A program made the position numbers and the translations under genes. From NCBI RefSeq assembly GCF_006345805.1, contig NC_043013.1:43028001-43092000 (forward strand): a stretch of 64,000 nt of DNA, given 5' to 3'. Every line of letters begins with the position of its first letter. Position 1 is the stretch's first letter. Positions 2,319-59,777 of the stretch are shown here, one piece after another. Below the pieces are notes generated by a model. It was given only the letters and a program-made list of their open reading frames with translations, did no database searches and had not been told where the DNA came from. The stretch comes from Octopus sinensis. Taxonomy: Eukaryota.

Positions 2319-2913
2319 CGCCTCCAGAACAGTCATCTTCGTCAGCGGAGACAAATACTAAAGAAGAAAAGAGTGAAATGTCCTCATCAACAGAGAATGA
2401 CACAAAAGAAGAAAATAATGAAGAAAAGTCCTCGTCAGCAGAGAATGATAATAAAGAAGAAAATGAAGAAAAATCCTCGGCAGCAGAGAATGATAATAAA
2501 GAAGAAAATGAAGAAAAATCCTTGTCAGCCAGTGTGAAAAGCACAACTCCATCTCAAAAATGTAATGAACTGAAAGGAGATAAGGTGGCCAAAACAGCTC
2601 TTTCGGACAATTTACCTTCAACACCGAGTGTTCCACATAAAGTTCCATTTGCATTAAAAGACACAGTCAGTATGGACACTTCCACCACTCAACAGGGTGA
2701 AGAAAATGAATCACTGATTGTACATGTTGATGATACACAGAATGATTTAGATGCTGATCTTGTGGCATCAAAGGACAAAGTGCGTGGCAAAACTGAAGCG
2801 AAGAAAACAGATGGAAGCAAAGTTGAAGAAAGGGCTAAAGGTAAAACAGAAGGAGGGCAAACTGAGAAGAAGGCTGATGAAAAGAAAGATGATAAAGATG
2901 TAAAGTCGAAGAG
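2319..2913 (+). CDS. SAFB: Copy A exon: large acidic/Lys-rich linker exon with 15-aa repeats
   Basis: ttctgtag acceptor, AG|gttggt donor, open frame; homologous to 39957..40443. Confidence 0.9.
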
Positions 2914-5900
2914 GTTGGTTTTCATGTCATCTTTCCCACTGCTTTGATTCAAAGATGTCATTAGTTAAATGATCTTACTTCTCGGTAACAGATGTTGACA
3001 TCTTGACTGCAACTGGGGTCTACAACTGCCAATGGGAACAGATTTTCTTAAACCTTAAGTTAACCTGTTTAAGTAGGTTTTCTTCAGAGAACATCCTCTC
3101 ATGGCTAATCGTGAGTTATTTTAAAAGAGAATGTGTGTATGTGGTTTGGTTGTTAGATTCAGGTTCAAACTACTAATTACAGCAATGATAGACATTTTCC
3201 TAGTCTTCTTCATAAAACATGAGAATCTGCTGTAATGATTGTACTTTGGAAATACTATTAAACACATAGCCTGGGCTGTAATTGATCTGAACTTATCTGA
3301 GGTATATTTCCATTAGTTATTCATGTTTGAGACAAAAAGGAAAACCCACGTTTTCTCCTGGGTCATTTCTTAGTCTCTTAAAAGGTTGATGTAAATTGTT
3401 GTGAGTGTACATGTGATGGATGATACCAATGAGGATGTTTGCTAGGTAATGTTGCGCTAGTATTCATCATATTTTAGATGGTTATTGTAAACTATAGTTC
3501 ATGAACTAAAAAGGGCCAGCAAAGTGTTCGGGGGTTGGCTGGGGTCAGGAGTCTCAGTTGAAATATAATTGCACATTCTCAGAGTCAGATGTTAAGTGAT
3601 TACCAAATTACTGACGCATTCTCCACAGGAACAAATTAACCAATATCAAGAAGCCAAATTATCTGTTTTGACGAAGATGGCAACTACAATTGAAGCAGAG
3701 GAGATGGAGGAGGGATCCTGAAGTTCCCAAGAATAAAATGACAGGACTTAGTCAATGTTAGATAATAAATGTTTTTGACAAGATACAAATTGGAAGATGT
3801 TTGGAAAGCAAAAAGTCTGAGTTTAAGATTCCTGAATTCCAGCCATGTTCCTGCTAAATTAGCAGTTAATGTTTAGGGAATTCCACATTTCTTGCTGACT
3901 TCTTTTTAGCTTCATGAAGACTATAGTTCTTGTATTTTTGTACATTTTTCTTCATAAGTGTTGGTCACATGTTGCTGATGTGTGGTGTCAGTTGTTAGCT
4001 AGTTTAGGTAATCCATTTATTGTCTTCACCAATATCTTCATTTGAAATTAGTGTCTTTTGTATTCATTTATTCCTGAAAGGGGATAATAAATGACTATTA
4101 CAAAAACACATCTTTGCAGCAGGTAAGCTTCTTATATCATTATGCTTTCCCCTATATGCAATATGATGTTAATATAAATATTTATATTACTACATAGTGT
4201 GTGGAACGTCTATGCTTTGCTAAATATTAGTTATTCTATTGCATCATTCTTTCTCCCTTACATAATAAGAATTTCTTTAAGAAGTGCATATGTATATGTC
4301 TATATACATACATACATAGCCCTTATTTGTTTTCTTAAATATATATCTCTACAAATCTATTTAGAGTTAGGGTCCTAGAATGGAGTGATATTGTTTGACT
4401 TTGCTAATTATATTTAATTCATATGAATGATGAAAAATTGTTCCAATACACTTCTATGACATTCATTAGTGATAATCATCATTCTGATATTTCTCAATGA
4501 TTGTTTTATTGTTGCAGTTCTTCAGCTTCTAAACCCAAAGTTATCAAGAATATGAGAAGTAAGTTTTTTTTTATTATTCTACATGTTCTGAATCTTATTA
4601 TTCACTAAGCCTTTGTTTTAAATGTGAGGTATTTGAAATCTTAACCTTGAAGGGTCAGATTTCCTGGTAATCTTTCCATATTCATTTGTTTCTGTACTTC
4701 ACAGGCAATGACCAAAACAGTCGGAATTTGTGGGTCAGTGGTCTTGCCACAAGCACCCGTGCTACAGACCTTAAAGTGCTTTTTACCAAATATGGCAAGG
4801 TATGTTGAATAATATCTGTTTCTTATATTTCATGTAATTTGTTACTAATCATATTTATTACTAATTAGTACTTAGATTCACACTATGCTAGTCTAGAGTG
4901 TGTTTACACTCTAAACAACTCTCTCTTCTCCAAATGTAGTCACTGTCAGACCATCAGCACTCTCTGCTTTGTGTGTGGTTGTCCACAACACAAGCTCAAC
5001 ATACCTTCCCTGCTCACTTCAGGTTAGCCGACTGGTTAGAATTCCACCAGTTCTACACTATTTTCTTTGACACATGTACTTGACTCTGGACCCATCAGAG
5101 ACAGCTAGGTAGGTGACAGAAAACATACTCTTTGGCATGTCCCTTTATATCCCATGCAAAACCAAAATTGTCTCGGGTCCTCTAAGTGGTTCAGTCTTAG
5201 CTGTGTTGCAGCATTTCATGCAAAGCATACAGCCTGAAATACTTAGAGAAAAAGCACTCTTACAAACAAGGCAGCTTTCATGTAACATGAAATCTGCAAA
5301 ACTATCTGAAATGCAAAGGATTCTGCCATGTATGGTACAACTGGTAAGCTTTCTCATTTCCAAAAGCAACTACTGATCTTGTTTGTTTTCAAAACTGATT
5401 TGAGTCATCTTTGCAAAATCCTTCTCCTTTCCACTTCTCTGGTTCAGCAACCAGTACTCTTCAACAGGAAGCTTCTACAGGGATTGTTTACTTTGTATCC
5501 ATCTCTGCATTGCATACTCTAAGTAAATCTTCTCTCAAAACTTGTTTTCCCCTCCTCCACCACGTACATGCCAAATGCAAAATCTCTCCCAATCACCTCA
5601 AAACAATAATGCCTTTAGCCATGAAATCTGTAGCTAACCCTATCCTCACCAAACTCTTCAGTTTGACTCCATATATCCCAATCTTTGGATTCTTGTTACA
5701 ATATGTCCCATTTGCCGGAAATTACTCCAACCATCATCTTATTGCACTCACTTTCAATTTGTTAGAGATGATAGTCATAAATAACCTTCTCTAACACTCA
5801 GAATCCATCTCTCCCCTTGATGACCTCCACTACTGCTTATATAAAGCCAATCTACTGGAGACATGTTCTTCTTCATTCATCAGTAGGTTGGTAAGTTTTT

Positions 5901-8900
5901 ACTCTTGGAAAAATACCTGAAGAAAACAATGTTGCAAAGCATTTAACTGTGATTTATGTGCCCTAAATCTCTGAGTAAATCTAACTGCCTGTGGGTTCTT
6001 GGATTGGAGGCTTCCTGTCAAGGTGACTAGAGCTTCAGTATGTACATGTCTATAGCTCTCTCAGACTTACATTCCATTAACTTCTGGTTTGCTTCATGGT
6101 TCAGTTTTGCCCTCTGTCTATACATCAATGACCTTTTTTCAGTCACCTCCAGCAATACCTACCACCCTTATGTAGATGATACTTTTCAATCATCCCTGAT
6201 CATTTACTCCAAACGTCATCCACATTCACCACATGCCAAACCTGCCCTGACTTCTTGGAAACATTCTTCAACAAAGGTGTGTTAGTTTTGACACATTCAA
6301 CAGACACTCTCCACTTCCACTCTGGTTTCTGAATATGAAGCACATGCAGCAACTGGACTGTAGAGTGCTCCTTCCAAATATTAGGCCTTGCTCTGGCTAA
6401 GGATCTCTCTTGGTAAATCCATATCCTCAAAAGAGCAAGGACTTAATCACAAATTCTGTCTTCTTTAGGACCAGGAAATACTTCAGCTGTTAGCCTTCTA
6501 CATAGCTCAGGTGAAACCTCCTATAGTGTACTCTTCTCACATCTGTGTCAGTACTGTTGCTATTCATAAACCACATCCAACTGAAATGGCACTCAACTGA
6601 ATGGTATAAAGACTTTTGTCAACATACTCAGGCTTCCAGTTGACGGACCTGCTGTCTTTTCTCTCTTCCCTTATCTATGCCTTCTGCATTGGAGTCTGTT
6701 CCTTGGAACTGGTTTGTCTTGTGCCACCCCCACTTTGTGATGCTTGATTCTCTTTTATTTTGTTAGTGACATTGTGTGTACACTCTACTTTAAAGCCTAT
6801 AATAACCCCCTGTTCTTAGTTCTTTTTCCCAGAATGTTAGCTTTCTAGAATCCTTTTCTGGCAGATGACATTTGCAACTATTCAAGCAGAATATCACTGA
6901 TAGATTTTCATGGTCTTAGAGAATTTGGAAGGGACCATGCACACTGACCAAACTAATTTTTAAAAATCCTTTATGTAAAGAGTTTTACTTAAACTCTATA
7001 TAAAACATTTACTACTTTTAATCTGCAATATCATTCTCTTTTACTCTTTTACGTGTTTCAGTCATTTTGACTGTGGCCATGCTGGAGCACTGCCTTCAGT
7101 CGATCAAATTGACCCCAGGACTTATTCTTTGTAAGCCTAGTACTTATTCTATCGGTCTCTTTTGCTGAACCGCTAACTTACAGGGATGTAAACACACCAG
7201 CATCAGTTGTCAAGCGATGTTGGTGGGGGACGGACACACAAACATATACATACACATACATATATACGACGGGCTTCTTTCAGTTTCCGTCTACCAAATC
7301 CACTCACAAGGCTTTGGTCGGCCCGAGGCTGTAGTAGAAGACACTTGCCCAAGGTGCCATGCAGTGGGACTGAACCCTGAACCATGTGGTTGGTAAGCAA
7401 GCTACTTACCACACAGCCACTCCTGCACCTATTTTCAGAAATAATTTATTAGTATTGGTAATATTGATGAGTATTGGGCTGAATAATTACCTATGTAAAT
7501 TTTTGTGTTTAAAATTTAATTTAGTTTTTGTTTTTGTCTACATCAGGTTGTTGGTGCCAAAGTAGTGACAAATGCACGAAGCCCTGGTGCTCGATGTTAT
7601 GGTTTTGTAACTATGTCTTCTTCACATGAAGCTTCTAAATGTATTCAACATTTTAATCAGACTGAACTGCATGGCCGTATGATATCAGTTGAAAGGGTGA
7701 GTTATCCAAAGTTCATTATTTTGTTTACAGACCCATTTATCAGCTACTGAATTAAATGTTATCAGCATTTCATTGTCAGCTGTTAGAAACATGCTCAGCA
7801 TTTGAAATAGATATCGGTTATCTTTAGAGTAAGGTTGAGATCATCAATTATGGTCAGTTATTGAGAAAAATATGTGTTGTTCAACTCTTGGAGGTGCAAA
7901 CCCAGGTCATCAGTTCATCAAAGCCCTTCAAGATCCTCCTGGATAGTCAGTATGTCCTTAATGGGAACCTATTAGACACCAGTGTTGGTGAGCAGTCCTG
8001 TACACATCAACCAGCTTAGTATTTTCATAGCATGTGTGTTAAGGATCACTGAAATGTTTTTTTAGTTACAGTACACTTGTTGGGTTTGTGCCACTCTGAT
8101 ATTGTAAAGCTGACTGACACTAAAGCTGTTGTGGCAGTAATTCAGAATGATGTCTTTTAATTTGTGTTCTGTTTAAAAAGCCATTTGTAAGGTCCAGCCA
8201 CAATAGTACCAGTTCTCTTGTTGAAGGTTTCTCTGATCAACTGATTAACCATACTGGAATGCTCTAGACACCCTGATGTCCTTTAAGAACTGAAGTATCA
8301 GCATAGAAGTTCAATTGGAGGTAATTTGTCAGGTGGCAGAAGAATAATGTCCTTTCAACACCCCTTCTTCACACTACCACTGATGAGCTACCCCAATCTT
8401 CTTCCATATTACCTTCAGGGCTTTACTAAATTCTTTGGAAGGTATTGATCATCTTCTGGGGCTTAACCTGCCCTTTACCTTCTTGACCTTTTCCTAGACC
8501 TCTTTCTAACTTGGTCCTTTGTTGTCAAATTCCAGAGCTGGTGAAGATGGATTGCTCAAGGGCTTTAAGTGGCTTATGTCGTGGTCCCTGAACTCACTTC
8601 TTAAAGTAACTCTCATATGACTCGATCGTGCCTCTGGAGCAAGTGATTTGACCCTTGCCCCAGCAACTATTTTGTAAACCCACATGTGTTTGCTTGAAAA
8701 TTAGCTTGCTTCCTAATCCATTGTCTCCTTTGCTATTCAGCTGTAAGGGCCATGAACTTTTATTGAGAGGTCTCCTTTCCTCCCCTCTTGCCTTTTTGAG
8801 CTGCTATCTCAAGCTCTTGAGTTCCCATTTAAGCTTATGGATTGTATTAGCCCTGCTATGTATGATGTAAAGAAGTTTCACTGCTTTCTTCTCCAACCTG

Positions 8901-11900
8901 AATATCTTAACTGCTAGACTGATGATGGTCATAGTTATGATGTGTGTGTGAATGTATAACGTGCAATGATATCAGTAATAATCTATTGGTAAAGAGATGT
9001 GTGATGATAAACTGTTGAATGTATGTATGTGTTTGAAGGTAGTACAAATACATCATTAATAAGGGTTTAGAGTTGAGATGTCACAAATAATATTTCCCGT
9101 TTTTTTTAGGCTAGAAGAGAACCTAACACTAAAGCACCAGTAACAAAAGCAGGAGAAAAAAAAGTAGAAAAGGCTGAAGTAAAGAAAGATGGTATGACTT
9201 CTTCCAGTGTTTCATATTTGTACCCTAAACAGAATTTGGCTCTAGAATTCCAATGCAGAGACTCTATAGGTCATTTGCATTGAAGTTAGCTGGACTTAGT
9301 GTTTCATGTTACTAACCAAGTAATTAGTTTAATAAAACCATTGGCATTTCACAATTACTTAACAGTAGTAATAGTATTCAAAGAATCATAAATATCAGGT
9401 GTGACTGTGTGGTAAGAAGTTTGCTTCCTAACCACATGGCTTTAGCTTCAGTCCCACTGTGTGGTACCTTAGGCGAGTGTTTCCTACTATAGTTCCAGGC
9501 TCACCTAAGCCCCATGAATGGATTTGGTAGGCAAAAACTGAAAGAAGTCTGTTGTACATATAGTACATATATAAACATATCCGTGTGTTTGGGTGTGTAT
9601 GTTGCTGTCTCCTTGCCTTGACTTTTTGTGATAGCTGTAAAGAATTGTTGCTATGATGTAAACAGTTTGCTGTGTTTCCAATCTTCCATGAAAACATGCC
9701 TGGTCATTAGAGTATATTACTGTACTTGGAACCAGATGAGGGTTCATGGCAGGAAGTGCATCTGTCCATAGCAAAATCTGCCTCAACTAATTTCCTGTTC
9801 TCCATGCAATCATGGAAAAAGTGGACATTAAAAACTATGATGATAATGATTAGTTGACACTTATAGGCAACTCTGTATTGCCTTGAAGTCTCTAGATTGT
9901 GATAGTGTCTCTATGTGTGTTTGTGCTGTTTGCAGAAAAAAAAGATGGTGATAAGAAAGTTGAGAAGAGAGAATCAAAGAAAGATGATAAAAGCAGGAGA
10001 ACGTCCAGCAGAAGAGATGACAAAAGACATAGTAGCAGGAGCAGCAGAAGTCGTCACAAAAGCTCAGGTCAGTCTTACTAACGGTCGCATGTGTGTGTGT
10101 GTATGTGTGTTTTGTCCTTGTGCAAAAGCTTGGGTCAGTCTTACTAAAGGTCACGTGTGTGTGTGTTTTGTCTTTGTACAAGAGTAGCTTGTTCTGAAGA
10201 GAATATGGTACTGAAATAATTTCCTGATTTGTGCTGGGTTCGACTGGCAAGATTTATAGAAATACATTTACTGGTGGATCTTCAGTGCCAGTGTGGCTTT
10301 GTAGTTATGCGTGGTACCTTGGGCTAGTGTCTTCTGCTTTAGCCCTGAGATGCCCTAAGCCTTGTGAGTGGATTTGGTAGATGGAAATTGAAATAAGCCT
10401 ATTGTATATGTTATACCATTGTCTTGGTGTCATAAGATGGTTGTAAAGAAGCATTGCCATTGGACAGATGAATTTGTTGGTTTTAAGTCATCTGTGAAAA
10501 ATTTGTGTGGTCATGGGAAATATCACCTTGCTTGAAAATAGGTGAGAATTGGCTACAGGAAGAATATGGACATTAAATGATGGTGATAACTGATTCACTA
10601 TTTCAGATAAATCTCATGCAACTACACCAAATAAGAGTACAGCTGAACCAGCTACAAAAGAAGGCTCTGAGAAAGGTGCAGAGCCTGCGGCAGCAGCAGG
10701 CGCCAAGGAGAAAGCTCCCAGTACAACAAAACCTAAACCACGAGGGCCTGGTGACCCTTCTGTCAAGAAAGAGATTTTATCATTTGATGAAATAAAAGTA
10801 AGTACAATTTTATGTATGTGTTTTTAATGTAGCGAAAGTGTGTAGTTGAAGTAGAATAAGATAAATAATTTCACCTTGAAACTAGAGTGGCTAATACCAC
10901 TTACTTGACCCTAAATTTAAAGTGTTTATCATCCCTGATATCATCTTGAAATCTTGAGATAGAGCTCCCCTACCTTAAAACTGGTCATAACTGGTGTGTT
11001 AGCTTTGAAATGCATTGTCTTCCAGTGAAGGTCTTAGTGTGTAGCACGCCTGAGATGTAACCTAAAGAAATTGTTTAAATTATGCAGATTGATTCAGATG
11101 TGACTCTGCAATAGTCACAATAGTTGTGGTGGTAATTGTGGTGGCTGTTGCAGTATAGAATATGTAAAGAAATTTCAAATCAGATTAGGTGGAAGAAGGT
11201 CAATTATTTCATTAGAATAGTGGCACTGTGACTGTGGGTGTAAGACACTGGACTACTGGCAACAAGAGTAGAAGTTCAAATCTTTCTACATCTGTAATAT
11301 TGTGTCCTATTTGGTGTAATAAATCATATAATTGTACTTACTCAAGTTTGCTCAACTGATAAAATTTATTCCAATCTACTTCAAGGTTGAATGCTTAGCA
11401 AGAGGAGGGAAATGTAGCTCCTAGTCTAGTGTGGAAAAATTATGTAAAACGAGAGATTTTTTTTTTATATTGGGATATAAGGGTATTATGTTGTCAGGGT
11501 AGCAGCTTTTAGTGCTATACAGAACTGCTAAAATCTATGAGATGTTTGTATTAAATTATTGTGGTATTTCTATTTGCCATATTATATGTCACTGACTCTT
11601 TGTATCATATCAAGTCTTATTTTGTATGGTTATTTACTTTTAAGATGTTTTCTTTGTTGATTTTATGTTTGTTTTATTCTTTGCTAATAATTATTCTCTT
11701 TTCACATTCCATTCATGAAAAAAAAAAAATCCCAACCAAATTTCTTGACAAAGGAAAGAGAAAGACGGCGTTCACGTCAGAGACAAAAAAATCGTAGGGT
11801 ACAGGATAAGCGTCGGTTGAAAAATCTTGGCCTGGCTCGTATGCGTCAGCAGGATGTGGTATGGAAACAGAAGGAGGAGGCGAAAAGATTGGGAAAAGTT

Positions 11901-14207
11901 AGAGAGAACATAAGGTTTGTTACAAGTGCATTCACATTTAAACTGTTTAAGGCAGAACAGCATGATTTTGTGAGAAAGAAGTTTACTTCACACCTCCATG
12001 ATACCAAATTCAGGGTCATTCTGCATCATATTGGACAGGTATTTCCTACCATAGTCTTAGGTTAGCCAATGCTTTCATAGATGGAAACTATGTTAAAAGC
12101 TGTCTGAAGGCCCAATCCTATTTTTGGTGGTAGAATTATTTTGTTGTCTTGTTTAAGACTACATCTGATCCTTAGGTGCCTTTAACAGAGTACACGCTTT
12201 ATCAAACATTCAGGCCTGGTCTCTAATCTGAGGATTACTTCTTCCCTTCTTCAAATTGGTCTTGGCAACACTGAGAAAACTCTTTAAATATTGCTATATT
12301 TTAAAAACTTAAGTATTTTTATGTTTTGAATAGTTTTTTACATAGTAATTGTGGATTAGAAGGAATTTGGAAATTTTAGCAATAAGAGAGCAAAGTCATT
12401 AAACTATCATTATCATCATCATCATTACTTAACATCTGCCTTCCACACTGGCATGGATTGGATGGTCAGGTAGGAGCCTGCACCAGACGTTTGTGTCTGT
12501 TTTGGCACATATTTTACAGCTGGATGCCCTTCCTAACACTAACCACCCAGCAAAGTGGACAGAAATGAATGGTAAAAATGTTAATGAATATATGAGAAGG
12601 AAATTAAAGATCACAATAAATAAGATGAATTCAGTGATATATTTATACTCTTTGTTCAAATTGCTTGATATCTTTAGTTTTAAGATCTGATAACCCAATG
12701 GATTAGTTGGACACCATTGTAATTTTGGGATAAAGAGAGGCTGAAATATTTGGAGTAGCTTTCCTCAATACCCTTTCAAAACCAAAGGAAGAATTGAACA
12801 TAGCAGTGAAAGTTAAAGAAATGATTGTCAGACAAACAGTTCCCCCTTAGTAACCTTACTTTTGAGTTGTTGTTTAGCTATCTTGCAGGCCTGTGATCAA
12901 AGGCCTTACAACTGTAACTCCCCCCTCCAATTTCTTTGTTATCTATAGGACTATATTATCTATGTATTTTGTGTTTTAAAATGAGAGGATGTTATATGAT
13001 AGCTGCACATGGTACTTATTAAGTGATTCATAAATGTTTACGACTAAAATGTCTTTGTCCAGCTTACAGTGATGTTAGCCTATTGTTTAGCAGCCTGATG
13101 CTTTTATTATTTTGTCCACCTGACTTTGCTTTCTTCTGCTTACCTTTGTGGTTTCTGTATAGATTACTCAACTACATCTGACCTTCCTAATATTTAAGGT
13201 CCATGAAGTGACATTTGGATAAATACGTAATTTCCCCTACATTCAGAAGAATGTCTCTTGGGTATTCTTGCAGAGTAACAGGTGTCAAGTTGGTGTGTGT
13301 AGGCAGGGATATTTCTTTTTTATTTTCTGTTGAAATTCTCTGTTGTCTTTATATTCTTTCGCACTTTTCAGATTAGAGAAAATGAAATTGGAAAAAATGA
13401 AACTGGAAAAAGAGAAACTGTTAAGATACAAAATGGAAAAAGAACTTCTTGAAATAAAAAGGCGTGATGTAGAGATGCATTCAGCTGAGATGTTACGGTA
13501 AGTGAGACAGATTATGTTGTTACTGTTACAGAAACTGAAGAAGGAGGCCATAAGATTGGACAGTGTTAGAGAGAAGATAAGGTTTGTTAAAAGTGCATTC
13601 ACATTGAAACTGCTTAAGACAGAATTGCATAATTGTGTGGGTAAGAAGTTTCCTTCACACCTCCATAATATCAAATTCAGTGTCATTGTGAATCATTTTG
13701 GATGGGTGTTTTCTGACATAGTCTTGGGTTGACCAATGCTTTCATAAGTGGAAACTAGGCGATCTTTTGATATGAGAACTGTGTTTGTGACTTTTTAAAG
13801 CACGTGTATTTGCTTGTTTCTGAAGAAGATTGTCACTTTTTATTTTTTTACATATGTGGGGTGAGGGGAAAGGGGATCTTTTGAAGTCGGCATGAAAGCA
13901 AGGGACTGAGAGAGCGCAATTGGATCAGGGAAGTTCTTTTCAAGTTGGCATGCCGTATGTGTGTGTGTGTTTGATGGGGTGTGTGAAAGAGAAAGTGTGG
14001 TTTGTATGTGAAGTTCTTTTGTTAGTGTGTGTGAAGAGACACAGAGTAATGTTGCAGGTGTGTGTGTATGTGAGAGAGGTTATGTATGTATGTATGAATG
14101 GCTTCAGTGACTACGCTCTTCCACAGAAAGGAACAAGGAGAGAAAAGAAAATAAAGAATGTGTAGTGGCTAGTGATCTATCATGGCACATTTATGTGTGT
14201 GTGTGTG

Positions 14208-14239
<32 letters not shown>

Positions 14240-17200
14240 GATACATCCATTTATGCATATATATATATAGATACATACATATATATCTATATATATGTGT
14301 GTGTGTGTGTGTGTCACTGAAGCCATTCATACATACATAGAGAACCTCTCTCTCTCTCTCTCTCACATACACACACACACAAACACACGGCATGCCAACT
14401 TCAAAAGAACTTCCCCGATCCAATCTTGCTCTCTCTGTCTCTTTTGCTTTTATGCCAACTTCAAATGATCCTCTTCTCCCCACCCCACATATATGAAAAA
14501 AAAATTTTAATTTTTACGGAAAGCGACAATCTTCTTCAGAAACATAAACAAATACATGTGCATTGTTTTTGACAACTATAGTACTCATAACGTAATTTAG
14601 CCAGAAACTATGTTTAAAGCTGTCTGAGGTGGGACCATCCCTGTTTTTGCTGGTACTATTATTGTGTTGTTCTCTTTAAGAGCACATCTGATCCTTGGAT
14701 GCCCTTTGCAGAGTACACACTTTTTCAAGCTTTCAGTCCAGGTCTCTAATCTAAGGATAGCTTCTTCCCTTCTTCTAATCAGTCTTGGGGACGCTGAAAA
14801 AACATACCTTGGGTTCTGCTCTTCCTTTTATAAGCCACAAAACCATTTTAAAGATCTTTTAGATAGTAATTGTGATTTATGAAGAATTTGGAAATTTTCA
14901 CAAAAGCAGGGCTAAGACATTTTAAATGAATGGTAAAAGAAAGAAAAAAAGTAAAGATTAGAGCATGTAAGATATATTAAGTGGTTTCTTTTTTTAACTA
15001 TTAAGTAACGTGTAAATATTGGGTTCAAAATTTTATATTCTCTGTTGAGGCAAGTGAGAATCAGAATCAAAATTAAAATCGATCAACATCAATGGAAATT
15101 GTAGCTGTGATACCAGTGCCGGTGGCACGTAAGCGAACCATCTGAACATGGCCGTTGCCAGCCTTGCCTGGCCCCCGTGCCGGTGGCACGTAAAAAGCAC
15201 CATCCGATCATGGCCATTGCCAGCCTCGCCTGGCCCCAGTGCCAGTGGCACGTAAAAAGCACCATCCGACCGTGGCCGTTTGCCAGCCCCGTCTGGCACG
15301 TAAAAAGCACCCACTACACTCACGGAGTGGTTGGCATTAGGAAGGGCATCCAGCTGTAGAAACATTGCCAGATCAAACTGGGCCTGGTGCAGCCTTCTGG
15401 CCTCCCAGACCCCTAGTTGAACCGTCCAATCCATGCTAGCATGGAAAGCGGACGCTAAATGGTGATGATGATGTTTAAATTGTATTATCTCTTGATAAGT
15501 TTTTCTTAAGATTTAATAATCCACTGGTTGGGTTGGATACCATTGTAAATTTTAGCCTATGTTTCGGGATAAAGAGAAGCTGACATATTTGGAGCAGTTT
15601 TTCTCGATACCCTTTCAAGAGATGATTATTAGACAGTTTCTCTGTTCTTGTAGTGAACTTTTCTTTGTATTGTTATCATTCAGGCCTATGATCAAAGGCC
15701 TTATAAGTTTAACTGTCACGCCCGCCCTTTTTGTGGGGAGGGTATCTGTAGTACTATATTATTTATGTATTTTGTGTTTGAAAATGATAGCTCCACATGG
15801 TACTTATTAAGTGTTGGGTGAATCTTTATTTAAGGCTGAAGTCTCTTTGTCCATCTCACAGTGATGATAGTTTGTTGTTTAGCAGACTGATACTCTATCT
15901 ATTATTTTATCTACGTAACTCACTTCCCTTTTCCAAGGGGTGAAATGTGTTTTTAAAGGTGACAGATACTTAATTTCCTCTAGTTTCAAAAGAACGTTTC
16001 TTGGATATTCTGGCAGAGTAACATGTCAGGGTAGATACAAGTTGATGAGTATAGGCAAGGATTGTCAGTTTTATTTTTATTTTCTGTTTAAATTCTTAAT
16101 GTTATCTTTATATTCTTTCATATTTTTCAGGTTAGAGAGAATGAAATTGGAGAAAATGAAGCTGGAGAAAGAGAAATTATTAAGATACAGGATGGAAAAA
16201 GAACTTCTGGAAATGGAAAGGCGTGATGTAGAGATGCGGTAAGTGAGATAAGTTATGTTGTTACTCTTATGCTGTGAACTTAATGATGAATTTTTATCCG
16301 TAACATAATGTAAATATTGGGTTAAGAACCCTTTTGGACAGGAAACACCAAAAGGCTGCTCTTGAGCATGAACCTACATCTGTAAATTTGACAGATATTC
16401 TACCATTGTCCGACAGGCAGCCTTTGACTTTTTCTATCCCAAAACGTTTTGAACCCAATATTTACATGTCATTATTTTGTAGCTTCATCTTCTTCGAGCT
16501 CTACAGATAAGAATGAATTATTTCACATCCTCTCAAAGTTTCTAAATACTTATGATAAACTTATTGCTTTTTTTTTCTTGGTGTCTTTGATACAACCTAT
16601 TTGATTGAATTATATTTTATTTACCCTTGGATAATTTCATGTTTGTTTTGTTTGTTGGATTGGGGATTAGGATGTAGGACTTTTCCTAATTGTGGAAAGT
16701 AATCTCAAATGGGATTCTTGTGTATGTAAAGATGTTGTAATGCTGATCTGTTGATCTCATCATAGAGGAAGCAAAACAATGAACCAGTGGTGTTCACATC
16801 ACTTCTGACCTAACTTATCCATTGGCCTAAACACAACCATTCATCATCATCATCACATAATGTCCGTTTCCCTGCTGGCATGGGTTGGACGGTTTCACAG
16901 GAACTGGCCAGTCAGAGAGCTGCACTAGTGTCCATTTGTCTGTTTTGGCATAGTATCTATGACTGGATGCCTTTCCTAATGCAACCACTTTACAGAATGT
17001 ACCAGGTGCTTTTTACGGAGCAACAACATGGATGCTTCACATGTGGCTCTAGCACAGGTGCTTTTCAGGTGGCAGTCACATTAATAAAAAAAAACAGCAA
17101 CAAAACCACTTTGTGGAAGCATGTATGTGTTGTAGCAGCTTGATCTGCTAGCAATAACAGCCAAATCGCCATATTCCACTGCTCATGACTGAAATGAGTA

Positions 17201-20200
17201 CTTTATGTTGTAGATCAGTATTGACACAATGAATGACAACAGCAGGTCTACAAAGCAATTTTATATATTGACATGAAATATTTACTGTGATGGTCTTTAG
17301 CTACTTAGTAGCAAGAAATTAAGTCCAGTAACTGTTTTGGTATGTCATCGCATAATCTTGATTCTGGGGCTGTTTATTGCCTTATTTTTGTTATGTGGAT
17401 ATCAGCTCATTGGTGTTGGGTTTGTTTAGCCCTAAGTCAGCTCAGATGGAGCAGACCTAAAGGTGGTCGAGTTTTGTTTTTCTTCTCTCAGACATAATGT
17501 TGGACTACATTAGCCAGTGCATCCAACATTTTATTTTTCTCTCAAGACAGTTGGGGATAATTTGAGGACATTTTGCATGCTGGTTCTGGTGTTTGAGGAC
17601 TGCATAAAAGCAACCTTGTTATTGAAACTGGTGTCCTGGTGGTTGATTGTTGAAAGTTAAGGTTGTTTACTATCTTTATCTTATCCTTTAGCTGCTTGTC
17701 ATTCAATACAACTGTTCTTTACTTGATTTTGCTGGTTTTTTGTTTAATATCAGGTTAAATGAAATGAGACATCCTGCAAAAAGACCTCATGATCGAAACC
17801 GTCTTCGTGATGAACTCTGGGACGAACCTAAACGATCCAGGATGATCGGTTCTGGCAACCACTCTAGATTTGAACTTCCATTCCAGAATGAGTCACGGTA
17901 AGTTGTGAGTGGTGAAGTTGATATGTTGTCATTGATTCCTTATTACCTGGCTAGTGTTTTAAATTAAAGTTTCATTTGCATTTCACAATATCTTTGGCCT
18001 GTTTTATATGTGTATGCTTAGAGATTATTGAGGCTAAATTTAACAGTTTGTACAAAAAGCAAAGAAAATACTGTCCCATCGAAAAATAAAAGTATTTTTA
18101 AAAAATCAAAAAATACCAACTAGATTATATCTGCAAGATAACTCTTCAGTTAGAGTGGCTGCTCTCATCCTCCACCACAGCCTCAGGACAGCTCTGAAAC
18201 CTGGCTCTGGTATTCCTCACTGACATGGATGATTTGACAGGACCTGATGGAATGGAGGACTGCATCATGCTCCAGTATCTGTTTTAGCATGGTTTCTTTG
18301 AACTAAGTGCTTTTTTTCATTCAACTGAGCGGGACCACAGTAAAGGAGGAGGCAACTGTATGCGAAGTGACGAGAGATTAAATTATATTTAAGGTATATA
18401 ATCCTGTTTGTAAATGTGAGGTGTGTGTCTTAACTCAGTCAATAGCTTCAATTTTGACAACAAAGTGAACAAAGGTATTCTAAATACTATACAAAATCAA
18501 TTCTGATTTATAGAAATTGTCGTTGCTTTGAGAGAAGGTAAACCATGACCTGCTGGTAATTGCTAATGATTCTGAATGAGGAAGAGATACAATCTCAAGA
18601 ACCAAGAGTTCTCTGAAATTGTTACACCATTAAGGAAAAGGCAGTCTGCTTTCTCTGCAAGCAAGAGGACAGCTCTAGACATTTGTTTAAGCTTCAGTAA
18701 GCATCAACATAATAGTTGTCGTATCTTATTGTATATTGGATACTTATCTAATTTCATCTTTCTTTTTCTCTTTCAGCTATAATGAATATGAGAACACTGA
18801 TTATGGTAGAAGGGACAGTAGATCTTTGGAAGGTGGAAGTCGCTATGATGAACGTAAAGAAAGAGAAATGATGCGAAGGGAAATGGGTCCTTTCCGAGAT
18901 ATTCGGGTCAGAGATGAAAGACGAACTGAAGACCGTTCTCGAACAGATGAAAAACTCAACAGGTAATGTGTGTTTTTAAACCTGACTTTTTTGTTTTTGA
19001 TTTTGTATCTTTCTACTGCTCACTATTGTTCTACACACTAGCTGGTATCTGGCTGTTGTTACAAACCTTATCCTTCATATCAGTCAAAGTTTATGCACAC
19101 ATTAGCCTCTGTGCAGGTTAGTTTTGGTGTATACACCAATCTCTGTTTGAGGTTAATGTTGGTGTGTATGCCAGTCTCCATATGGGTCAGTGTTGATGTG
19201 AACAAGGTTCTGTATAGGTGAAAGTTGATCAATTGCTCAGGTTGTGTACATTGTCCCTTGTACAGTATGTTGCTAAACACTTTAATTTGTTAATTTTGTA
19301 TCTGGTTTACCTCCACATCCAGGATGCCCTTTGAATTAAGAAGAGATATGGGACCAAGTGGAGAGCCTGATAAAAGATATGTTGGTTCCGATCGAGGACG
19401 TGATAATGACCGACGAAGTATATCAGCTCACAATAGATTGGGCAGGGTGAGAAATTCTTTTGGTAAGCTTCCACTCACTTCTTTTGATCATTTCTCTCTC
19501 TCTCAAGTAAAATTTCACCCACTTCTTAAAGCATTCTGTAGCTGTCCTTCTCTTAACTCTGTAGCACTTAAACCACTAATATTGGGCCCAGATATTTTAC
19601 TTGTCTTATGTTCAACTAGATCTGGCCTCCCACACTTCCCCTGTCATTCTCAAAATAAACAATCACTTCATCAAAATCTTGAAGCTACAAGATAATGCAT
19701 GACTAATTCAAAACAATGTGAATGAAAAAGCATTACTTTCAACAGAGTAATCTGAATGCTAAAGAGTTAAGCCCTAGTCTTCTCCATATCTCTTGTCTTT
19801 TCTTTTCATCAATATTCTCTTCATTTTATTTTGACATTAATTCCTTTCAGTCTTTATTTTTCATATTCGTGTATTCATTAGTGCATTTTCTGCCTTCTTC
19901 CTTTCAGGTGGTGGACCAGACCAGAGATCTTCTTGGGGTTCTGGCAGTGTAGATAGGAAAGTGGACAACTGGTCCCACATGCATGGAGACATGGACCAAC
20001 CCAGTGAACCATGGCTTGGTGACCCCATGGAGAAAACGGGGCGTGATGCCAGTGGGGCATTTGTAGACAATAGCAGACCCGGTAATAGTGGTGGGATGGG
20101 GCAGAACTTGGGATCTGGTAACACATTTGGCAACTCTCAGTCACATAGTGGGATCATGATGGTTACACGTGGTGGTGGAGGTGGTAGTGTCAGTAATACG

Positions 20201-20257
20201 AGTGGACGTATGCAAGAACCTCGTTTTGATGCTTACAGTATTATGGGATCTATGTGA
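2319..20257 (+). CDS. SAFB: SAFB/SLTM-family scaffold attachment factor, copy A (5' exons incl. SAP domain lie upstream of the window)
   Basis: join(2319..2913,4518..4558,4705..4799,7547..7696,9110..9191,9936..10067,10607..10797,11754..11914,13372..13497,16131..16238,17754..17897,18777..18962,19323..19462,19908..20257). All introns are GT-AG, phases are compatible and the frame stays open to TGA at 20255-20257. [52 protein letters not shown] is the SAFB-family signature. Confidence 0.92.
2336..2518 (+). repeat. Coding minisatellite, 4 x 45-48 nt ([15 protein letters not shown])
   Basis: Four tandem in-frame units; copy B has one. Confidence 0.85.
4081..4122 (+). other. Copy A candidate 42-nt poison (PTC) cassette exon
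   Basis: Polypyrimidine tract + aag acceptor, cag|gtaagc donor; in-frame TAA TAA when joined to 2913; same-size counterpart at 41563..41604. Confidence 0.6.
4518..4558 (+). CDS. SAFB: Copy A micro-exon ([13 protein letters not shown])
   Basis: ttgcag acceptor, gtaagt donor, phase 2 to 1 fits neighbours; homologous to 42866..42900. Confidence 0.85.
4705..4799 (+). CDS. SAFB: Copy A RRM exon 1 (RNP2)
   Basis: [26 protein letters not shown]; cag/gtatg splice sites. Confidence 0.95.
4890..6850 (+). mobile_element. CR1/L2-group LINE relic (RT)
   Basis: Decayed RT motifs [23 protein letters not shown] with many stops and frameshifts; boundaries approximate. Confidence 0.6.
7036..7430 (-). mobile_element. 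tRNA-derived SINE, family 1 (full length)
   Basis: Reverse complement of A-box/B-box head gcaggagtggctgtgtggtaag...gggttcagtccc, central microsatellite, tail gactgaaac...aaaagag; many copies in the window. Confidence 0.85.
7547..7696 (+). CDS. SAFB: Copy A RRM exon 2 (RNP1)
   Basis: [50 protein letters not shown]; cag/gtgagt. Confidence 0.95.
9110..9191 (+). CDS. SAFB: Copy A post-RRM Lys-rich exon
   Basis: [27 protein letters not shown]; tttag/gtatga; phase 0 to 1. Confidence 0.85.
9395..9850 (+). mobile_element. SINE family 1 head with a different (gat)n-tailed 3' half
   Basis: Same tRNA-like head; 3' end gtggacattaaaaactatgatgat. Confidence 0.7.
9936..10067 (+). CDS. SAFB: Copy A Lys/Arg/Ser-rich exon
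   Basis: [44 protein letters not shown]; tgcag/gtcagt. Confidence 0.85.
10300..10590 (+). mobile_element. Degenerate SINE, same type as 9395..9850
   Basis: gccttgtgagtggatttggtagatggaaa core; ends just upstream of the 10607 acceptor. Confidence 0.6.
10607..10797 (+). CDS. SAFB: Copy A linker exon ending [10 protein letters not shown]
   Basis: tttcag/gtaagt; open frame; ends phase 0; ILSFDEIK resembles the SAFB pre-coiled-coil motif. Confidence 0.85.
11754..11914 (+). CDS. SAFB: Copy A coiled-coil exon A
   Basis: [54 protein letters not shown]; 161 nt like 50463..50623; acceptor has a weak pyrimidine tract. Confidence 0.75.
13372..13497 (+). CDS. SAFB: Copy A coiled-coil exon B
   Basis: [41 protein letters not shown]; ttcag/gtaagt; symmetric phase 2-2. 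Confidence 0.85.
13532..13581 (+). CDS. Copy A candidate alternative exon A' (duplicated 3' part of exon A)
   Basis: [17 protein letters not shown]; acceptor gttacag formed at the duplication junction, donor gtttgt as in exon A; phase 0 to 2. Confidence 0.45.
13758..14602. mobile_element. Merlin-like non-autonomous foldback element
   Basis: Long degenerate inverted arms starting GGCGATC; 8-bp TSD ggaaacta/agaaacta; absent from the unduplicated intron near 12085. Confidence 0.7.
15040..15475 (+). mobile_element. SINE family 2 with internal ~55-bp minisatellite and (gat)n tail
   Basis: Core gttggcattaggaagggcatccagctgtagaaac...catgctagcatggaaagcggacgctaaatggtgatgatg; other copies at ~12410, 16845, 21805, 28910, 31750, 47090, 50128, 57870. 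Confidence 0.8.
16131..16238 (+). CDS. SAFB: Copy A duplicated coiled-coil exon B'
   Basis: [36 protein letters not shown]; ttttcag/gtaagt; 108 nt, phase 2-2. Confidence 0.8.
16309..16466. mobile_element. Small MITE-like palindrome
   Basis: Perfect 15-bp inverted ends tgtaaatattgggtt/aacccaatatttaca, extending imperfectly ~50 bp. Confidence 0.55.
17754..17897 (+). CDS. SAFB: Copy A exon ([23 protein letters not shown])
   Basis: cag/gtaagt; homologous to 52502..52648. Confidence 0.88.
18777..18962 (+). CDS. SAFB: Copy A Arg/Glu/Asp-rich exon
   Basis: tttcag/gtaatg; homologous to 58208..58408. Confidence 0.88.
19323..19462 (+). CDS. SAFB: Copy A penultimate coding exon
   Basis: [18 protein letters not shown]...; ccag/gtaagc; homologous to 58601..58737. 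Confidence 0.85.
19908..20257 (+). CDS. SAFB: Copy A last coding exon (Gly/Ser/Met/Asn-rich tail)
   Basis: tttcag acceptor; open to TGA; ends [13 protein letters not shown]. Confidence 0.9.
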
Positions 20258-20729
20258 AATCCAAACTGAGGACTAAAGTGTGAAGTCATGGTGAGGTGTT
20301 TGATTTTAGAGGTGCAGAAGGTCTCTGAGACAGATAATAAAACCCTGCCCTCCAGCCAATATATCATCCACATCCTGCATTCCATTTGTCACGTAGTGCT
20401 TGGTTGTTGGACATCCAATCATATTTCTGTCCTTCCATATTTTAATGCATGCACACACACACACACACACATTGTCTTCTCCCTATCTCCACTCTACTCC
20501 CTCTTACATTACTGTCTTAATATATTTATTTCCTTCAAATTTGTTGCTATATTTTATACTGTTATTCCTGACACACACACATTTCCACAGTTGTTATATA
20601 TTAATGAAAGAGGAGGGAGAGGAGCCCAGATACATTGTATTTACCAAAGTGGGGGAGAGAGGAAGAAGAGCAACCACAGAATGTAATAAAGAAGTGAAAA
20701 GAGACCACATAGAATGTAATATATGGAGA

Positions 20730-20735
20730 AATAAA
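20730..20735 (+). terminator. Candidate polyadenylation signal, copy A
   Basis: AATAAA within a 3' block conserved with copy B (61951..61956), followed by T-rich sequence. Confidence 0.45.
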
Positions 20736-21049
20736 TTTTATTCACTATAAAACAATCGCAAAGTATTTTATTTATTCTATATATATTCATGTCTTTATTT
20801 CTTTCTGTATTTTTTCTTTACCACCTCTGCCTTTGCTCTATCATTTTTTCATCTTTTCTCTTTCTCTATTTCAACATGTCACTGTTTGTTTTCCTTGAAG
20901 CTTCTAGTGGAAGTCAAAATGTTCGTTTTTGTTATCAACTTAATTTTCACAATAAGTTTATTCACCTACTCAAACAGATTCCTCCTGTGGTGGCCTCATC
21001 CAGAATTGCCACATCTTTGTTCACAGGTTACAAGACCTGTCTTTTTCAG

Positions 21050-21300
21050 CTATGAGCTGCCACTCAACCCTGCACACACTGACAGTCCTGTATGCAATAT
21101 TGGCAGAGGGTTTGGACAAGCAGGCCTAGCCGGAAGTATGAGTGCATAATGTCTCACAGTCTTGCATTTGAGGCTTTCAATCATACCTTGGAGGCTCCCT
21201 GAGGTAACACTCACATCATGGGTAAAGTTGTTCTCTAGTCATTTCAAACAAACTCTGACAATCATCTCAAATAAAACACCTGCAGTGGCTTTTCCTTACG
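21050..21300 (+). mobile_element. Helitron PIF1-helicase relic
   Basis: LPLNPAHTDSPVCNIGRG ... EAFNHTL ... IMGKVVL ... FKQTLTII resembles the Helitron helicase motifs LPL..CNI, EALDRTL, GDFRQTLPVI. Confidence 0.6.
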
Positions 21301-21949: not shown

Positions 21950-22240
21950 GAATCAGTAAAGAGAGCGTAACAAAACAAAACACTACAAACAAAAATCCAA
22001 AATTGAAAATGCACGTTGGCAAAGATTTTTGGTAGAAAATCCAAAGAATAAATTTGTGCTTCTTTGTGCACTGAATATTGAGCCACAGGAGTATCTCGTC
22101 TTAAACACCAGTAATAGTCTGCCATCATCACAGTGTCCCAACATCTTTGGTACTGAGTTTCCATCTCCTTGATGTCCTCATGGAATTGTTCACCTTGTTC
22201 ATTGCTAACATCTCCGAGATTTTCAGGAAAACAATCAAGA
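21950..22240 (-). mobile_element. DNA transposase C-terminal relic (Chapaev/CMC-like)
   Basis: SHLDCFPENLGDVSNEQGEQFHEDIKEMETQYQRCWDTVMMADYYWCLRRD; family assignment from memory, needs an HMM check. Confidence 0.55.
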
Positions 22241-22244
22241 TGAC

Positions 22245-24566: not shown

Positions 24567-59777
<35,211 letters not shown>

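What the first reader, a model, noticed from the sequence alone, without database searches (positions are those of the whole stretch)
2319..59777. Head-to-tail SAFB gene pair with asymmetric fates
Seen: two collinear paralogues, 4.3 kb from stop A to ATG B, with the same intron positions and phases and alignable introns, so this is a genomic duplication rather than retroposition. A keeps the RRM and expands linkers and coil; B alters the RRM and contracts linkers. Established: mammals have an adjacent SAFB1/SAFB2 pair, but head-to-head, and many invertebrates have one gene. Inference: an independent cephalopod duplication giving a conserved regulator plus a neofunctionalised partner.
Basis: partly seen in the sequence, partly recalled or inferred. 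Interest (0 to 1): 0.7.

Follow-up and report, generated by a model that had tools for sequence, protein, structure and literature searches.

The report
Octopus SAFB tandem gene cluster
The window holds two neighbouring copies of the nuclear RNA/DNA-binding gene SAFB from Octopus sinensis, one conservative and one with a remodelled RNA-binding domain that is still kept by selection; they belong to a cluster of at least six or seven SAFB copies, in a family that invertebrates are said to have only once.

Summary
Gene A (window 2319-20257, cut at its 5' end by the window edge) and gene B (24567-59777, complete, 17 exons, 825 aa) are collinear head-to-tail SAFB paralogues 4309 nt apart. Their shared exons have identical intron phases and parts of their introns align.

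The asymmetry is also real. A keeps a canonical RRM, carries a 45-nt coding repeat and has a duplicated coil exon. B has a strongly diverged RRM (41.6% identity to A; RNP1 RCYGF to RCHAF) and has lost three linker exons (405 nt).

B is not a pseudogene. It is intact in O. sinensis and O. vulgaris, and the exons recovered from O. bimaculoides are open. dN/dS is 0.23 between O. sinensis and O. vulgaris.

The duplication is independent of the vertebrate SAFB1/SAFB2/SLTM split. However, the "pair" reading is incomplete. The window is O. sinensis CM016875.1:43,028,001-43,092,000. A and B lie in a cluster F-D-E (minus strand) and Z-A-B (plus strand), with a further copy G downstream of B in two sister species. 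The A-B unit was itself duplicated in inverted orientation as F-D, and gene conversion has made the copies mosaic.

Both genes are already in RefSeq as automatic models. I found no paper describing the cluster. Neofunctionalisation of B is plausible but not shown.

The parts
2319..2913 (+). Gene A exon a (acidic/Lys-rich linker, phase 1 to 2); contains a 45-nt coding repeat x4.3 at 2335-2529
   Evidence: translation identical to P0124 (RefSeq SAFB1 isoform X2, O. sinensis)
4518..4558 (+). Gene A small exon a2 ([14 protein letters not shown], phase 2 to 1)
   Evidence: RefSeq P0124 differs by 3 residues (ITG vs MRS) at the a2/b junction
4705..4799 (+). Gene A exon b, first half of the RRM (RNP2 NLWVSGL)
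7547..7696 (+). Gene A exon c, second half of the RRM (RNP1 RCYGFVTM)
9110..10797 (+). Gene A linker exons d (9110-9191), e (9936-10067) and f (10607-10797): Lys/Glu-rich, Arg/Ser-rich, ILSFDEIK motif; absent from B
11754..11914 (+). Gene A exon g, start of the Arg/Glu-rich coil
13372..13497 (+). Gene A coil exon h1
13532..13581 (+). Dead copy of the 3' part of exon g, left by the intragenic duplication 11864-13528 to 13531-16269
16131..16238 (+). Gene A coil exon h2 (duplicate of h1; both are in the RefSeq model)
17754..20257 (+). Gene A exons j (17754-17897), k (18777-18962), l (19323-19462), m (19908-20257; stop 20255-20257)
20258..24566 (.). A-B intergenic spacer, 4309 nt; the last 500 nt are CpG-rich (o/e 1.04 vs 0.38 for the window), compatible with B having its own promoter
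24567..24701 (+). Gene B exon 1: ATG and SAP domain
28613..35066 (+). Gene B N-terminal acidic exons 1b (28613-28673), 1b2 (30158-30183), 1c (30601-30652), 1d (32683-32714), 2 (34396-34638), 2b (35033-35066)
   Evidence: assembled protein identical to P0245 (XP_029646790.1)
39957..40443 (+). Gene B exon a (one copy of the 15-aa repeat; 108 nt shorter than in A)
42866..42900 (+). Gene B small exon a2
43056..43150 (+). Gene B exon b, diverged first half of the RRM (NLWVSGFPANVSDKFITAIFSKYGK)
46886..47035 (+). Gene B exon c, diverged second half of the RRM (RNP1 RCHAFVTM; VNG for LHG)
47378..48276 (.). 341-nt tandem repeat x2.7 in the B intron that replaces the lost exons d-f
50436..50623 (+). 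Gene B exon g (annotated acceptor 50436; the acceptor corresponding to A's is at 50463), spliced directly to exon c
52072..52648 (+). Gene B exons h (52072-52182, single copy) and j (52502-52648)
58208..59777 (+). Gene B exons k (58208-58408), l (58601-58737), m (59434-59777; stop 59775-59777)

Best explanation
A and B are two adjacent members of a lineage-specific SAFB gene cluster in Octopus. The cluster was built by repeated tandem and inverted segmental duplication and then partly homogenised by gene conversion.

A is a conservative copy. It has a SAP domain, a canonical RRM, a long Lys/Glu/Arg-Ser linker, an Arg/Glu-rich coil and a Gly-rich tail.

B descends from the same ancestor. It lost the three linker exons, so its RRM now sits five residues ahead of a roughly 100-residue helix. 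It replaced about half of its RRM residues, including the RNP1 Tyr-Gly (to His-Ala). It has since been held under purifying selection as an intact gene for at least the time since O. bimaculoides and O. sinensis split.

Inferred, not shown: B still enters SAFB complexes through the conserved coil and SAP domain but reads RNA differently, or more weakly. It would then act as a variant subunit or modulator of the canonical SAFBs.
For: Identity and structure:
- A's in-window model equals RefSeq P0124 at 829 of 832 residues.
- My 17-exon model of B is identical to P0245 / XP_029646790.1.

Cluster map from record coordinates: F (993 aa) to D to E (838 aa) on the minus strand, and Z (1020 aa) to A (1026 aa) to B (825 aa) on the plus strand.
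- F-D is collinear with A-B over about 66-77 kb: 38.6 kb aligned at 86.6% identity, with blocks at 93-98%.
- A-E align over 85% of the gene at 86.6%. A-B, Z-A and Z-B align over only 16-30% at about 75%.

Mosaicism (synonymous divergence):
- A-B: dS 0.26 before the RRM, 0.63 after it.
- B-D: dS 0.012 before the RRM, 0.52 after it.

Asymmetry (Tajima test): in the RRM, 1-4 changes unique to A against 32-41 unique to B (p 3e-6 to 7e-10). Over the whole protein, 52 against 147.

Constraint on B:
- O. sinensis vs O. vulgaris: dS 0.032, dN 0.0072, omega 0.23, binomial p 9e-5. There is one conservative change in the 81-residue RRM.
- O. sinensis vs O. bimaculoides: omega 0.43 over 251 codons. The same RCHAF RRM is present and there is no trace of exons d-f.

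Fold:
- Pfam finds SAP (38 bits) and RRM_1 (36 bits, full length) in B.
- The AlphaFold model has a beta-alpha-beta-beta-alpha-beta RRM at 376-450 (pLDDT 74-90) and one helix at 456-556 (pLDDT 88-97).

Independence from the vertebrate paralogues.
Against: - I obtained no transcript evidence. The RefSeq models are automatic, and the last protein search found no transcript-derived fragments spanning B's c-g junction.
- Omega of 0.43 against O. bimaculoides rests on only 30 substitutions.
- O. bimaculoides B is annotated as two fragments and the locus holds assembly gaps, so its intactness there is not proven.
- B's sister copy D is decaying: its SAP exon has an in-frame stop. B-type copies can therefore be lost.
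- The branching order of Z, B and the A/E/F group is not resolved. The full-length tree puts B basal (92%), the N-terminal tree puts B with A/E/F (77%), and B has a long branch.
- Nothing here tests RNA binding or dimerisation.
Confidence: 0.75

Rival explanations
1. B is not a young Octopus duplicate of an A-like gene. It is the Octopus orthologue of an old octopod paralogue with a divergent RRM, represented in Argonauta hians by P0133. Its resemblance to A in the 5' half and in the introns would then come from later gene conversion inside the cluster.
For: - The RRM-only tree groups Argonauta P0133 with Octopus B and D at 100% bootstrap.
- B and P0133 share 7 identical derived residues at otherwise conserved RRM sites, including RCYGF to RCHAF and LHG to VNG.
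- Both lack the long RRM-coil linker and the ILSFDxIK motif.
- In the coil tree P0133 sits next to the A/B/D/E/F group, while Argonauta P0131 groups with Z (84%).
- Argonauta also has its canonical and divergent genes adjacent to each other.
- Gene conversion is clearly active in the cluster.
Against: - The full-length tree puts all Octopus copies in one clade (100%), sister to the canonical Argonauta gene (99%), with P0133 outside.
- The three divergent RRMs are all long branches, so their grouping may be long-branch attraction.
- 22 of the 29 conserved sites where both differ from the consensus carry different residues. Several of the shared changes are conservative (L/I, L/V, S/T).
- Support for P0133 joining the A/B group in the coil tree is below 50%.
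Confidence: 0.3
2. B is a decaying duplicate (pseudogene, or on its way to becoming one). Its altered RRM and lost exons would reflect relaxed constraint only.
For: - A-B omega in the RRM is 0.91.
- Three exons are lost.
- The sister copy D carries a stop in its SAP exon.
- O. bimaculoides B is annotated only as fragments.
Against: - The 825-codon ORF over 17 canonical exons is intact in two species, and the exons recovered in a third are open.
- Omega is 0.23, with p 9e-5 against neutrality.
- The RRM differs by a single conservative change between O. sinensis and O. vulgaris.
- The exon loss keeps the reading frame: c ends in phase 0 and g starts in phase 0.
- The RRM fold is predicted with confidence.
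Confidence: 0.07
3. A and B represent ancient SAFB versus SLTM lineages shared with vertebrates.
For: RefSeq happens to name B 'SAFB-like transcription modulator' and A 'scaffold attachment factor B1'.
Against: In the tree, vertebrate SAFB1, SAFB2 and SLTM cluster together (80%). All coleoid copies cluster apart from them. The Octopus copies are monophyletic (100%). The RefSeq names are automatic best-hit labels.
Confidence: 0.03
4. The pair is an assembly artefact (uncollapsed haplotypes or a misjoin).
For: None beyond the general risk in repeat-rich cephalopod assemblies.
Against: - Aligned DNA is about 24% diverged, and the exon content of the two genes differs.
- The same A-to-B order and spacing is found in O. 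vulgaris (GCA_951406725.2), collinear with the window at 95-97% identity.
- B is also present and collinear in O. bimaculoides.
Confidence: 0.01

Closest known systems
Mammalian SAFB1/SAFB2 (plus SLTM)
   Same: - Same family and architecture: SAP, RRM, Arg/Glu-rich coil, Gly-rich tail.
- The paralogues are physically adjacent.
- Duplication is lineage-specific.
- The paralogues are thought to be partly redundant and partly distinct (PMC4582101, PMC10901741).
   Different: - The mammalian pair is head-to-head, about 500 bp apart, with a bidirectional promoter (PMC4582101). A and B are head-to-tail, 4.3 kb apart.
- The only head-to-head junction in the octopus cluster is F|Z, about 18.9 kb apart. 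In Argonauta the two genes are head-to-head about 7.1 kb apart.
- Mammalian SAFB1 and SAFB2 keep nearly identical RRMs. Octopus B has replaced about 58% of its RRM residues and lost the linker.
- Octopus has at least six or seven loci rather than three, and they are still undergoing gene conversion.
Single-copy invertebrate SAFB (e.g. Drosophila Saf-B)
   Same: A and Z look like ordinary orthologues of the single invertebrate gene. Their RRM is close to those of the scallop, Aplysia, Lineus and amphioxus proteins.
   Different: [quoted passage not shown] Octopus is an exception, and cuttlefish and Argonauta each have at least two.
Asymmetrically evolving tandem duplicates in general
   Same: One copy stays conservative while the other accelerates and is restructured by exon loss, then comes under renewed purifying selection.
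   Different: This is not a clean two-gene case. The unit was re-duplicated and the copies exchange sequence, so the history is reticulate.

Membership tests
SAFB family (SAFB1/SAFB2/SLTM-type proteins) | N-terminal SAP (SAF-box) domain | tested here: met
   Pfam SAP scores 38.2 bits in B (residues 13-48, encoded at 24567-24701) and 38.9 bits in A's full protein P0124. A's SAP exon lies upstream of the window.
SAFB family (SAFB1/SAFB2/SLTM-type proteins) | Central RRM of the SAFB type | tested here: met
   RRM_1 scores 45.8 bits in A and 36.4 bits in B, both covering the full model. A is close to identical to other animal SAFB RRMs. B is diverged (RCHAF in RNP1), but the beta-alpha-beta-beta-alpha-beta fold is predicted at pLDDT 74-90.
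SAFB family (SAFB1/SAFB2/SLTM-type proteins) | Arg/Glu-rich helical (coiled-coil) region after the RRM and a Gly-rich C-terminal tail | tested here: met
   Exons g, h and j encode R/E/K-rich sequence, predicted in B as one helix at 456-556 with pLDDT 88-97. The Gly-rich tail and terminal xPRFxxY motif are conserved in A, B and the outgroups.
SAFB family (SAFB1/SAFB2/SLTM-type proteins) | Binding to S/MAR DNA and purine-rich RNA; self- and hetero-association | not testable with these tools
   Requires biochemistry.
Head-to-head SAFB1/SAFB2-type pair with a shared bidirectional promoter | Divergent orientation with a short shared promoter | tested here: not met
   A and B are both on the + strand, head-to-tail, 4309 nt apart.
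Retained, asymmetrically diverged tandem duplicate (candidate neo- or subfunctionalisation) | Tandem position with conserved exon-intron structure | tested here: met
Retained, asymmetrically diverged tandem duplicate (candidate neo- or subfunctionalisation) | Significant rate asymmetry against an outgroup | tested here: met
   Tajima tests with Z, Argonauta P0131 and scallop as outgroups.
Retained, asymmetrically diverged tandem duplicate (candidate neo- or subfunctionalisation) | Purifying selection on the fast copy after its divergence | tested here: met
   Omega 0.23 (p 9e-5) between O. sinensis and O. vulgaris; omega 0.43 against O. bimaculoides.
Retained, asymmetrically diverged tandem duplicate (candidate neo- or subfunctionalisation) | Positive selection during the divergence, or a demonstrated new activity | tested here: inconclusive
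   A-B omega in the RRM is 0.91. This fits either relaxation or a burst of adaptive change. No branch-site test could be run and no functional data exist.

The most novel reading that the evidence does not exclude
Octopus expanded SAFB into a multi-gene cluster, including RRM-variant members such as B, as an adaptation to its very repeat-rich introns. In mammals and flies SAFB proteins bind A-rich transposon RNA and keep intronic transposons from being spliced in or retrotransposed (PMC10901741). Under this reading the variant RRMs of B (and of D, G and Argonauta P0133) recognise different transposon-derived RNAs, making the cluster an evolving RNA-level transposon-control system.
Probability: 0.12. 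Interest if true: 0.7.

Novelty: new member of a known kind. Interest (0 to 1): 0.38.

Why it matters
SAFB proteins couple chromatin and nuclear-matrix attachment to RNA processing. They were recently shown to keep intronic transposons silent, and that work states that invertebrates have a single SAFB gene (PMC10901741).

Octopus breaks that rule. It has a cluster of at least six or seven loci formed independently of the vertebrate triplication. At least one member keeps the SAP domain and the coil, has a rebuilt RRM and no linker, and is still under selection.

This offers a natural experiment on what the SAFB RRM and linker do. It is also a further case of lineage-specific gene-family expansion in cephalopods, and a practical warning for annotation: RefSeq currently fuses F and D into read-through isoforms and gives the paralogues inconsistent SAFB1, SAFB2 and SLTM names.

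It remains an ordinary kind of event (tandem duplication with asymmetric divergence) in a known family.

Tried and rejected
- Exact-ORF look-up of the window's exon-a ORF found nothing. The related Logan contig L001 (SRR11869391, species not identified) only showed an A-type orthologue 89.6% identical to A.
- My first gene models were wrong in detail. I proposed alternative splice sites (an internal donor in exon a, an alternative acceptor in exon b, a downstream acceptor in exon a) to fix phase mismatches. The annotated proteins then showed that small exons 2b and a2 and four N-terminal exons had been missed.
- A sensitive search for remnants of exons d-f in B's c-g intron found none.
- Downstream synteny between Argonauta and Octopus showed only repeats, so positional orthology of B and Argonauta P0133 could not be tested.
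- The third protein search, meant to find transcript-derived fragments spanning B's exon junctions, returned only three unrelated-purpose hits. Expression therefore remains unverified.
- Look-ups for P0122, P0125 and P0134 failed because only the longest product of each gene is indexed. The cuttlefish gene arrangement is therefore unknown.
- Rfam found no RNA family in the window.
- Pfam found nothing in eight intronic ORFs, including the GC-rich block at 45.3-46.8 kb.
- Neutral-distance rooting of Z, A and B failed because the alignable intron identities are all about 75-76%.

Full report
**What is in the window.** The window is AT-rich animal DNA (GC about 0.38). Comparing it with itself shows one long collinear repeat on the + strand: 1452-20769 against 39255-61986. 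Translated exons hit SAFB-family proteins.

A search with my first model of the second copy returned annotated octopod proteins. These identify the source. The exons of the first copy (A) are 100% identical to RefSeq 'scaffold attachment factor B1 isoform X2' of Octopus sinensis (P0124). My final 17-exon model of the second copy (B) is identical over 825 residues to XP_029646790.1, 'SAFB-like transcription modulator isoform X1' (P0245). From the record coordinates the window is GCA_006345805.1 CM016875.1:43,028,001-43,092,000.

**Check of the observation.** All exons have AG/GT boundaries. The ten exon types shared by A and B have identical phases, and exons b and c have identical lengths.
- A's stop codon ends at 20257 and B's ATG starts at 24567, so the spacer is 4309 nt.
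- Parts of the introns align: 30% of the gene length at 75.7% identity.
- A's in-window model (14 exons, 832 aa) equals P0124 residues 195-1026, except for three residues at the a2/b junction.
- A is cut by the window edge. Its ATG and SAP exon lie 14.2 kb upstream. The finding's start at 2319 is the acceptor of an internal exon.

The stated asymmetries hold:
- A carries a 45-nt coding repeat x4.3 in exon a.
- A has an intragenic tandem duplication (11864-13528 to 13531-16269). This yields two coil exons, h1 and h2, and a dead fragment of exon g.
- B lacks exons d, e and f (405 nt, 135 aa) without any remnant. A 341-nt tandem repeat occupies that intron. The loss preserves the reading frame because exon c ends in phase 0 and exon g starts in phase 0. 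The O. vulgaris protein model also joins c directly to g.
- The RRM is 41.6% identical between A and B, against 65% for the whole protein. RNP1 reads RCYGFVTM in A and RCHAFVTM in B.

**Is B alive?** The evidence says yes.
- B has an intact 825-codon ORF in O. sinensis.
- Its orthologue in the independent O. vulgaris assembly is collinear at 95-97% DNA identity and has the same 17 exons.
- Between these two species B has 16 synonymous and 14 non-synonymous differences: dS 0.032, dN 0.0072, omega 0.23. The binomial p against neutrality is 9e-5. Only one conservative change falls in the RRM.
- O. bimaculoides also has a collinear B with the same RCHAF-type RRM, no trace of exons d-f and open exons. 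Omega is 0.43 over 251 codons. That locus is annotated as two fragments and contains assembly gaps.
- Pfam still recognises SAP and a full-length RRM_1 in B.
- An AlphaFold model built on a 21-sequence alignment predicts the SAP helices and a beta-alpha-beta-beta-alpha-beta RRM at 376-450 (pLDDT 74-90). A single helix at 456-556 (pLDDT 88-97) begins five residues after the RRM. The rest is disordered.
- The 500 nt before B's ATG are CpG-rich (o/e 1.04, against 0.38 for the window), compatible with B having its own promoter.
- I could not obtain transcript evidence.

**Asymmetry.** In Tajima relative-rate tests the RRM shows 1-4 changes unique to A against 32-41 unique to B, depending on the outgroup (p 3e-6 to 7e-10). 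Over the whole protein, with Z as outgroup, the counts are 52 against 147. A-B omega is 0.91 in the RRM and 0.37-0.47 elsewhere. This fits a phase of relaxed or adaptive change in B's RRM, followed by the constraint seen today.

**The pair is part of a cluster.** Look-ups of the annotated proteins place further SAFB genes on the same chromosome.
- Z (P0127, 1020 aa) ends 4.7 kb upstream of A.
- On the opposite strand lie F (P0123, 993 aa), D and E (P0128, 838 aa).
- F and Z are head-to-head, about 18.9 kb apart, with a DUF7041 gene between them.
- D has a B-like RRM but is annotated only through read-through isoforms of F (P0243, P0122). Its own SAP exon carries an in-frame stop.
- The F-D segment is collinear with A-B over about 66-77 kb: 38.6 kb aligned, mean 86.6% identity, blocks at 93-98%. 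The A-B unit was therefore itself duplicated in inverted orientation.
- About 8-10 kb downstream of B, O. vulgaris and O. bimaculoides have yet another, more divergent SAFB-like gene, G. In O. sinensis this position lies beyond the window.
- Synonymous distances are mosaic. A-B is 0.26 in the 5' part and 0.63 in the 3' part. B-D is 0.012 in the 5' part and 0.52 in the 3' part. This shows gene conversion or unequal exchange.

**Age and phylogeny.** In a neighbour-joining tree of 741 trimmed columns:
- Vertebrate SAFB1, SAFB2 and SLTM form one clade (80%).
- All Octopus copies form one clade (100%), sister to the canonical Argonauta gene (99%).
- B is the first branch inside the Octopus clade (92%), on a long branch.

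DNA-level alignability shows that A, E and F are young relatives, while Z, B and the A/E/F stem separated much earlier and close together in time. B predates the O. bimaculoides-O. sinensis split: dS between the B orthologues is 0.075, against 0.4-0.6 between A and B.

Region-specific trees complicate the picture.
- The RRMs of B, D and the second Argonauta gene (P0133) group at 100% and share seven derived residues.
- Both B and P0133 lack the long linker.
- In the coil tree P0133 lies next to the A/B/D/E/F group, while Z groups with the canonical Argonauta gene (84%).

The divergent type may therefore date to the octopod ancestor, with later homogenisation inside Octopus. Alternatively this is long-branch attraction plus parallel change. 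I rate the old-origin reading at about 0.3.

Argonauta's two genes are head-to-head, 7.1 kb apart. The cuttlefish has two genes on one contig, but their arrangement could not be retrieved.

**How it most likely works.**
- Shown: gene structures, the cluster map, rate asymmetry, constraint on B, and retention of the SAP, RRM fold and coil.
- Inferred from what is known of SAFB proteins: A, like Z, does the ordinary SAFB job. Mammalian SAFB proteins bind RNA through the RNP1 and RNP2 surfaces (PMC9958909) and act on purine- or A-rich RNA (PMC10901741).
- Inferred for B: B keeps the parts needed to sit on chromatin (SAP) and, from general knowledge of the family, to associate with other SAFBs (coil). 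But it presents an RRM with an altered RNP1, and the RRM is rigidly close to the helix because the Lys/Glu/Arg-Ser linker is gone. The likeliest role is a variant subunit with changed or weakened RNA specificity. A dominant modulator role is equally compatible.

**Comparison with what is known, and novelty.** The family is well known. The mammalian SAFB1/SAFB2 pair is adjacent but divergent, with a bidirectional promoter of about 500 bp (PMC4582101). Invertebrates are stated to have one SAFB gene (PMC10901741).

The octopus genes are present in RefSeq as automatic models with inconsistent names. Full-text searches found no paper on SAFB in octopus or cephalopods.

I therefore file this as a new member of a known kind: a lineage-specific tandem expansion with one asymmetrically diverged but retained copy. 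It is of moderate interest. A link between the expansion and the transposon-rich octopus introns is the most novel reading left open, and nothing here tests it.

Noticed in passing
window 11864-16269: An intragenic tandem duplication in gene A (11864-13528 copied to 13531-16269, blocks at 71-84% identity). It duplicates coil exon h (h1 13372-13497, h2 16131-16238) and leaves an unusable copy of the 3' part of exon g at 13532-13581, only 34 nt after h1's donor. The two-h arrangement is also seen in the E-type proteins of O. vulgaris and O. bimaculoides.
   Followed up: partly
window 2765-4164 and 40295-41645: The 3' end of exon a plus about 1.2 kb of the following intron is the best conserved block among the paralogues compared. 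The A-B translation is about 89% identical in all three frames over 2765-3083. Z-A and Z-E are 83% identical over 2.4 kb, which is better than most coding exons. It could be a gene-conversion hot spot or a conserved regulatory or splicing element. The open frame that runs past the donor (…[14 protein letters not shown]) is also conserved in another species (P0001).
   Followed up: partly
window 47378-48276 (also 47260-47452 and 15113-15297): A 341-nt tandem repeat x2.7 (96% matches) with an internal 62-nt sub-repeat lies in B's intron c-g, where exons d-f are missing. A related 62-nt array lies in A's intron in the opposite orientation.
   Followed up: no
window 7037-7431, 9396-9602, 22495-22873, 23152-23548, 26550-26763, 29552-29914, 51420-51831, 58764-59175: An interspersed repeat of about 400 nt (SINE-like) has at least eight copies in both orientations, 73-91% identical. 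No Rfam family was detected in the window.
   Followed up: no
window 24067-24566: The 500 nt upstream of B's ATG have a CpG observed/expected ratio of 1.04, against 0.38 for the whole window and 0.58 for the whole spacer. This looks like a promoter.
   Followed up: no
window 4518-4799: The RefSeq protein P0124 reads …VIKNITGNDQ… at the a2/b junction. Canonical GT-AG splicing (4558|4705) gives …VIKNMRSNDQ…, as in paralogue E. The RefSeq junction would need non-canonical intron ends.
   Followed up: partly
L005 42114-75600 (O. sinensis, minus strand of the record): Copy D is a B-like SAFB copy downstream of F. Its SAP exon has an in-frame stop (46366-46479) and its C-terminal exons carry many radical changes. 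RefSeq uses its exons only in F-D read-through isoforms (P0243, P0125, P0122). D's 5' exons are nearly identical to B's (dS 0.012), but its 3' exons are not (dS 0.52).
   Followed up: partly
L006 53312-60118 (O. vulgaris); L008 22250-22540 (O. bimaculoides): A further, more divergent SAFB-like gene (G; annotated as 915 aa and 834 aa) starts about 8-10 kb downstream of B. It has a recognisable exon-a motif (…[17 protein letters not shown]…) and a strongly altered RRM. In O. sinensis it would lie just beyond the window end.
   Followed up: partly
L007 (Argonauta hians BAAFZT010000080.1): The canonical (P0131) and divergent (P0133) SAFB genes of Argonauta are head-to-head about 7.1 kb apart. This orientation resembles the mammalian SAFB1/SAFB2 pair rather than octopus A-B.
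   Followed up: no
window 42570-42683: A (TA)58 microsatellite lies in B's intron between exons a and a2.
   Followed up: no
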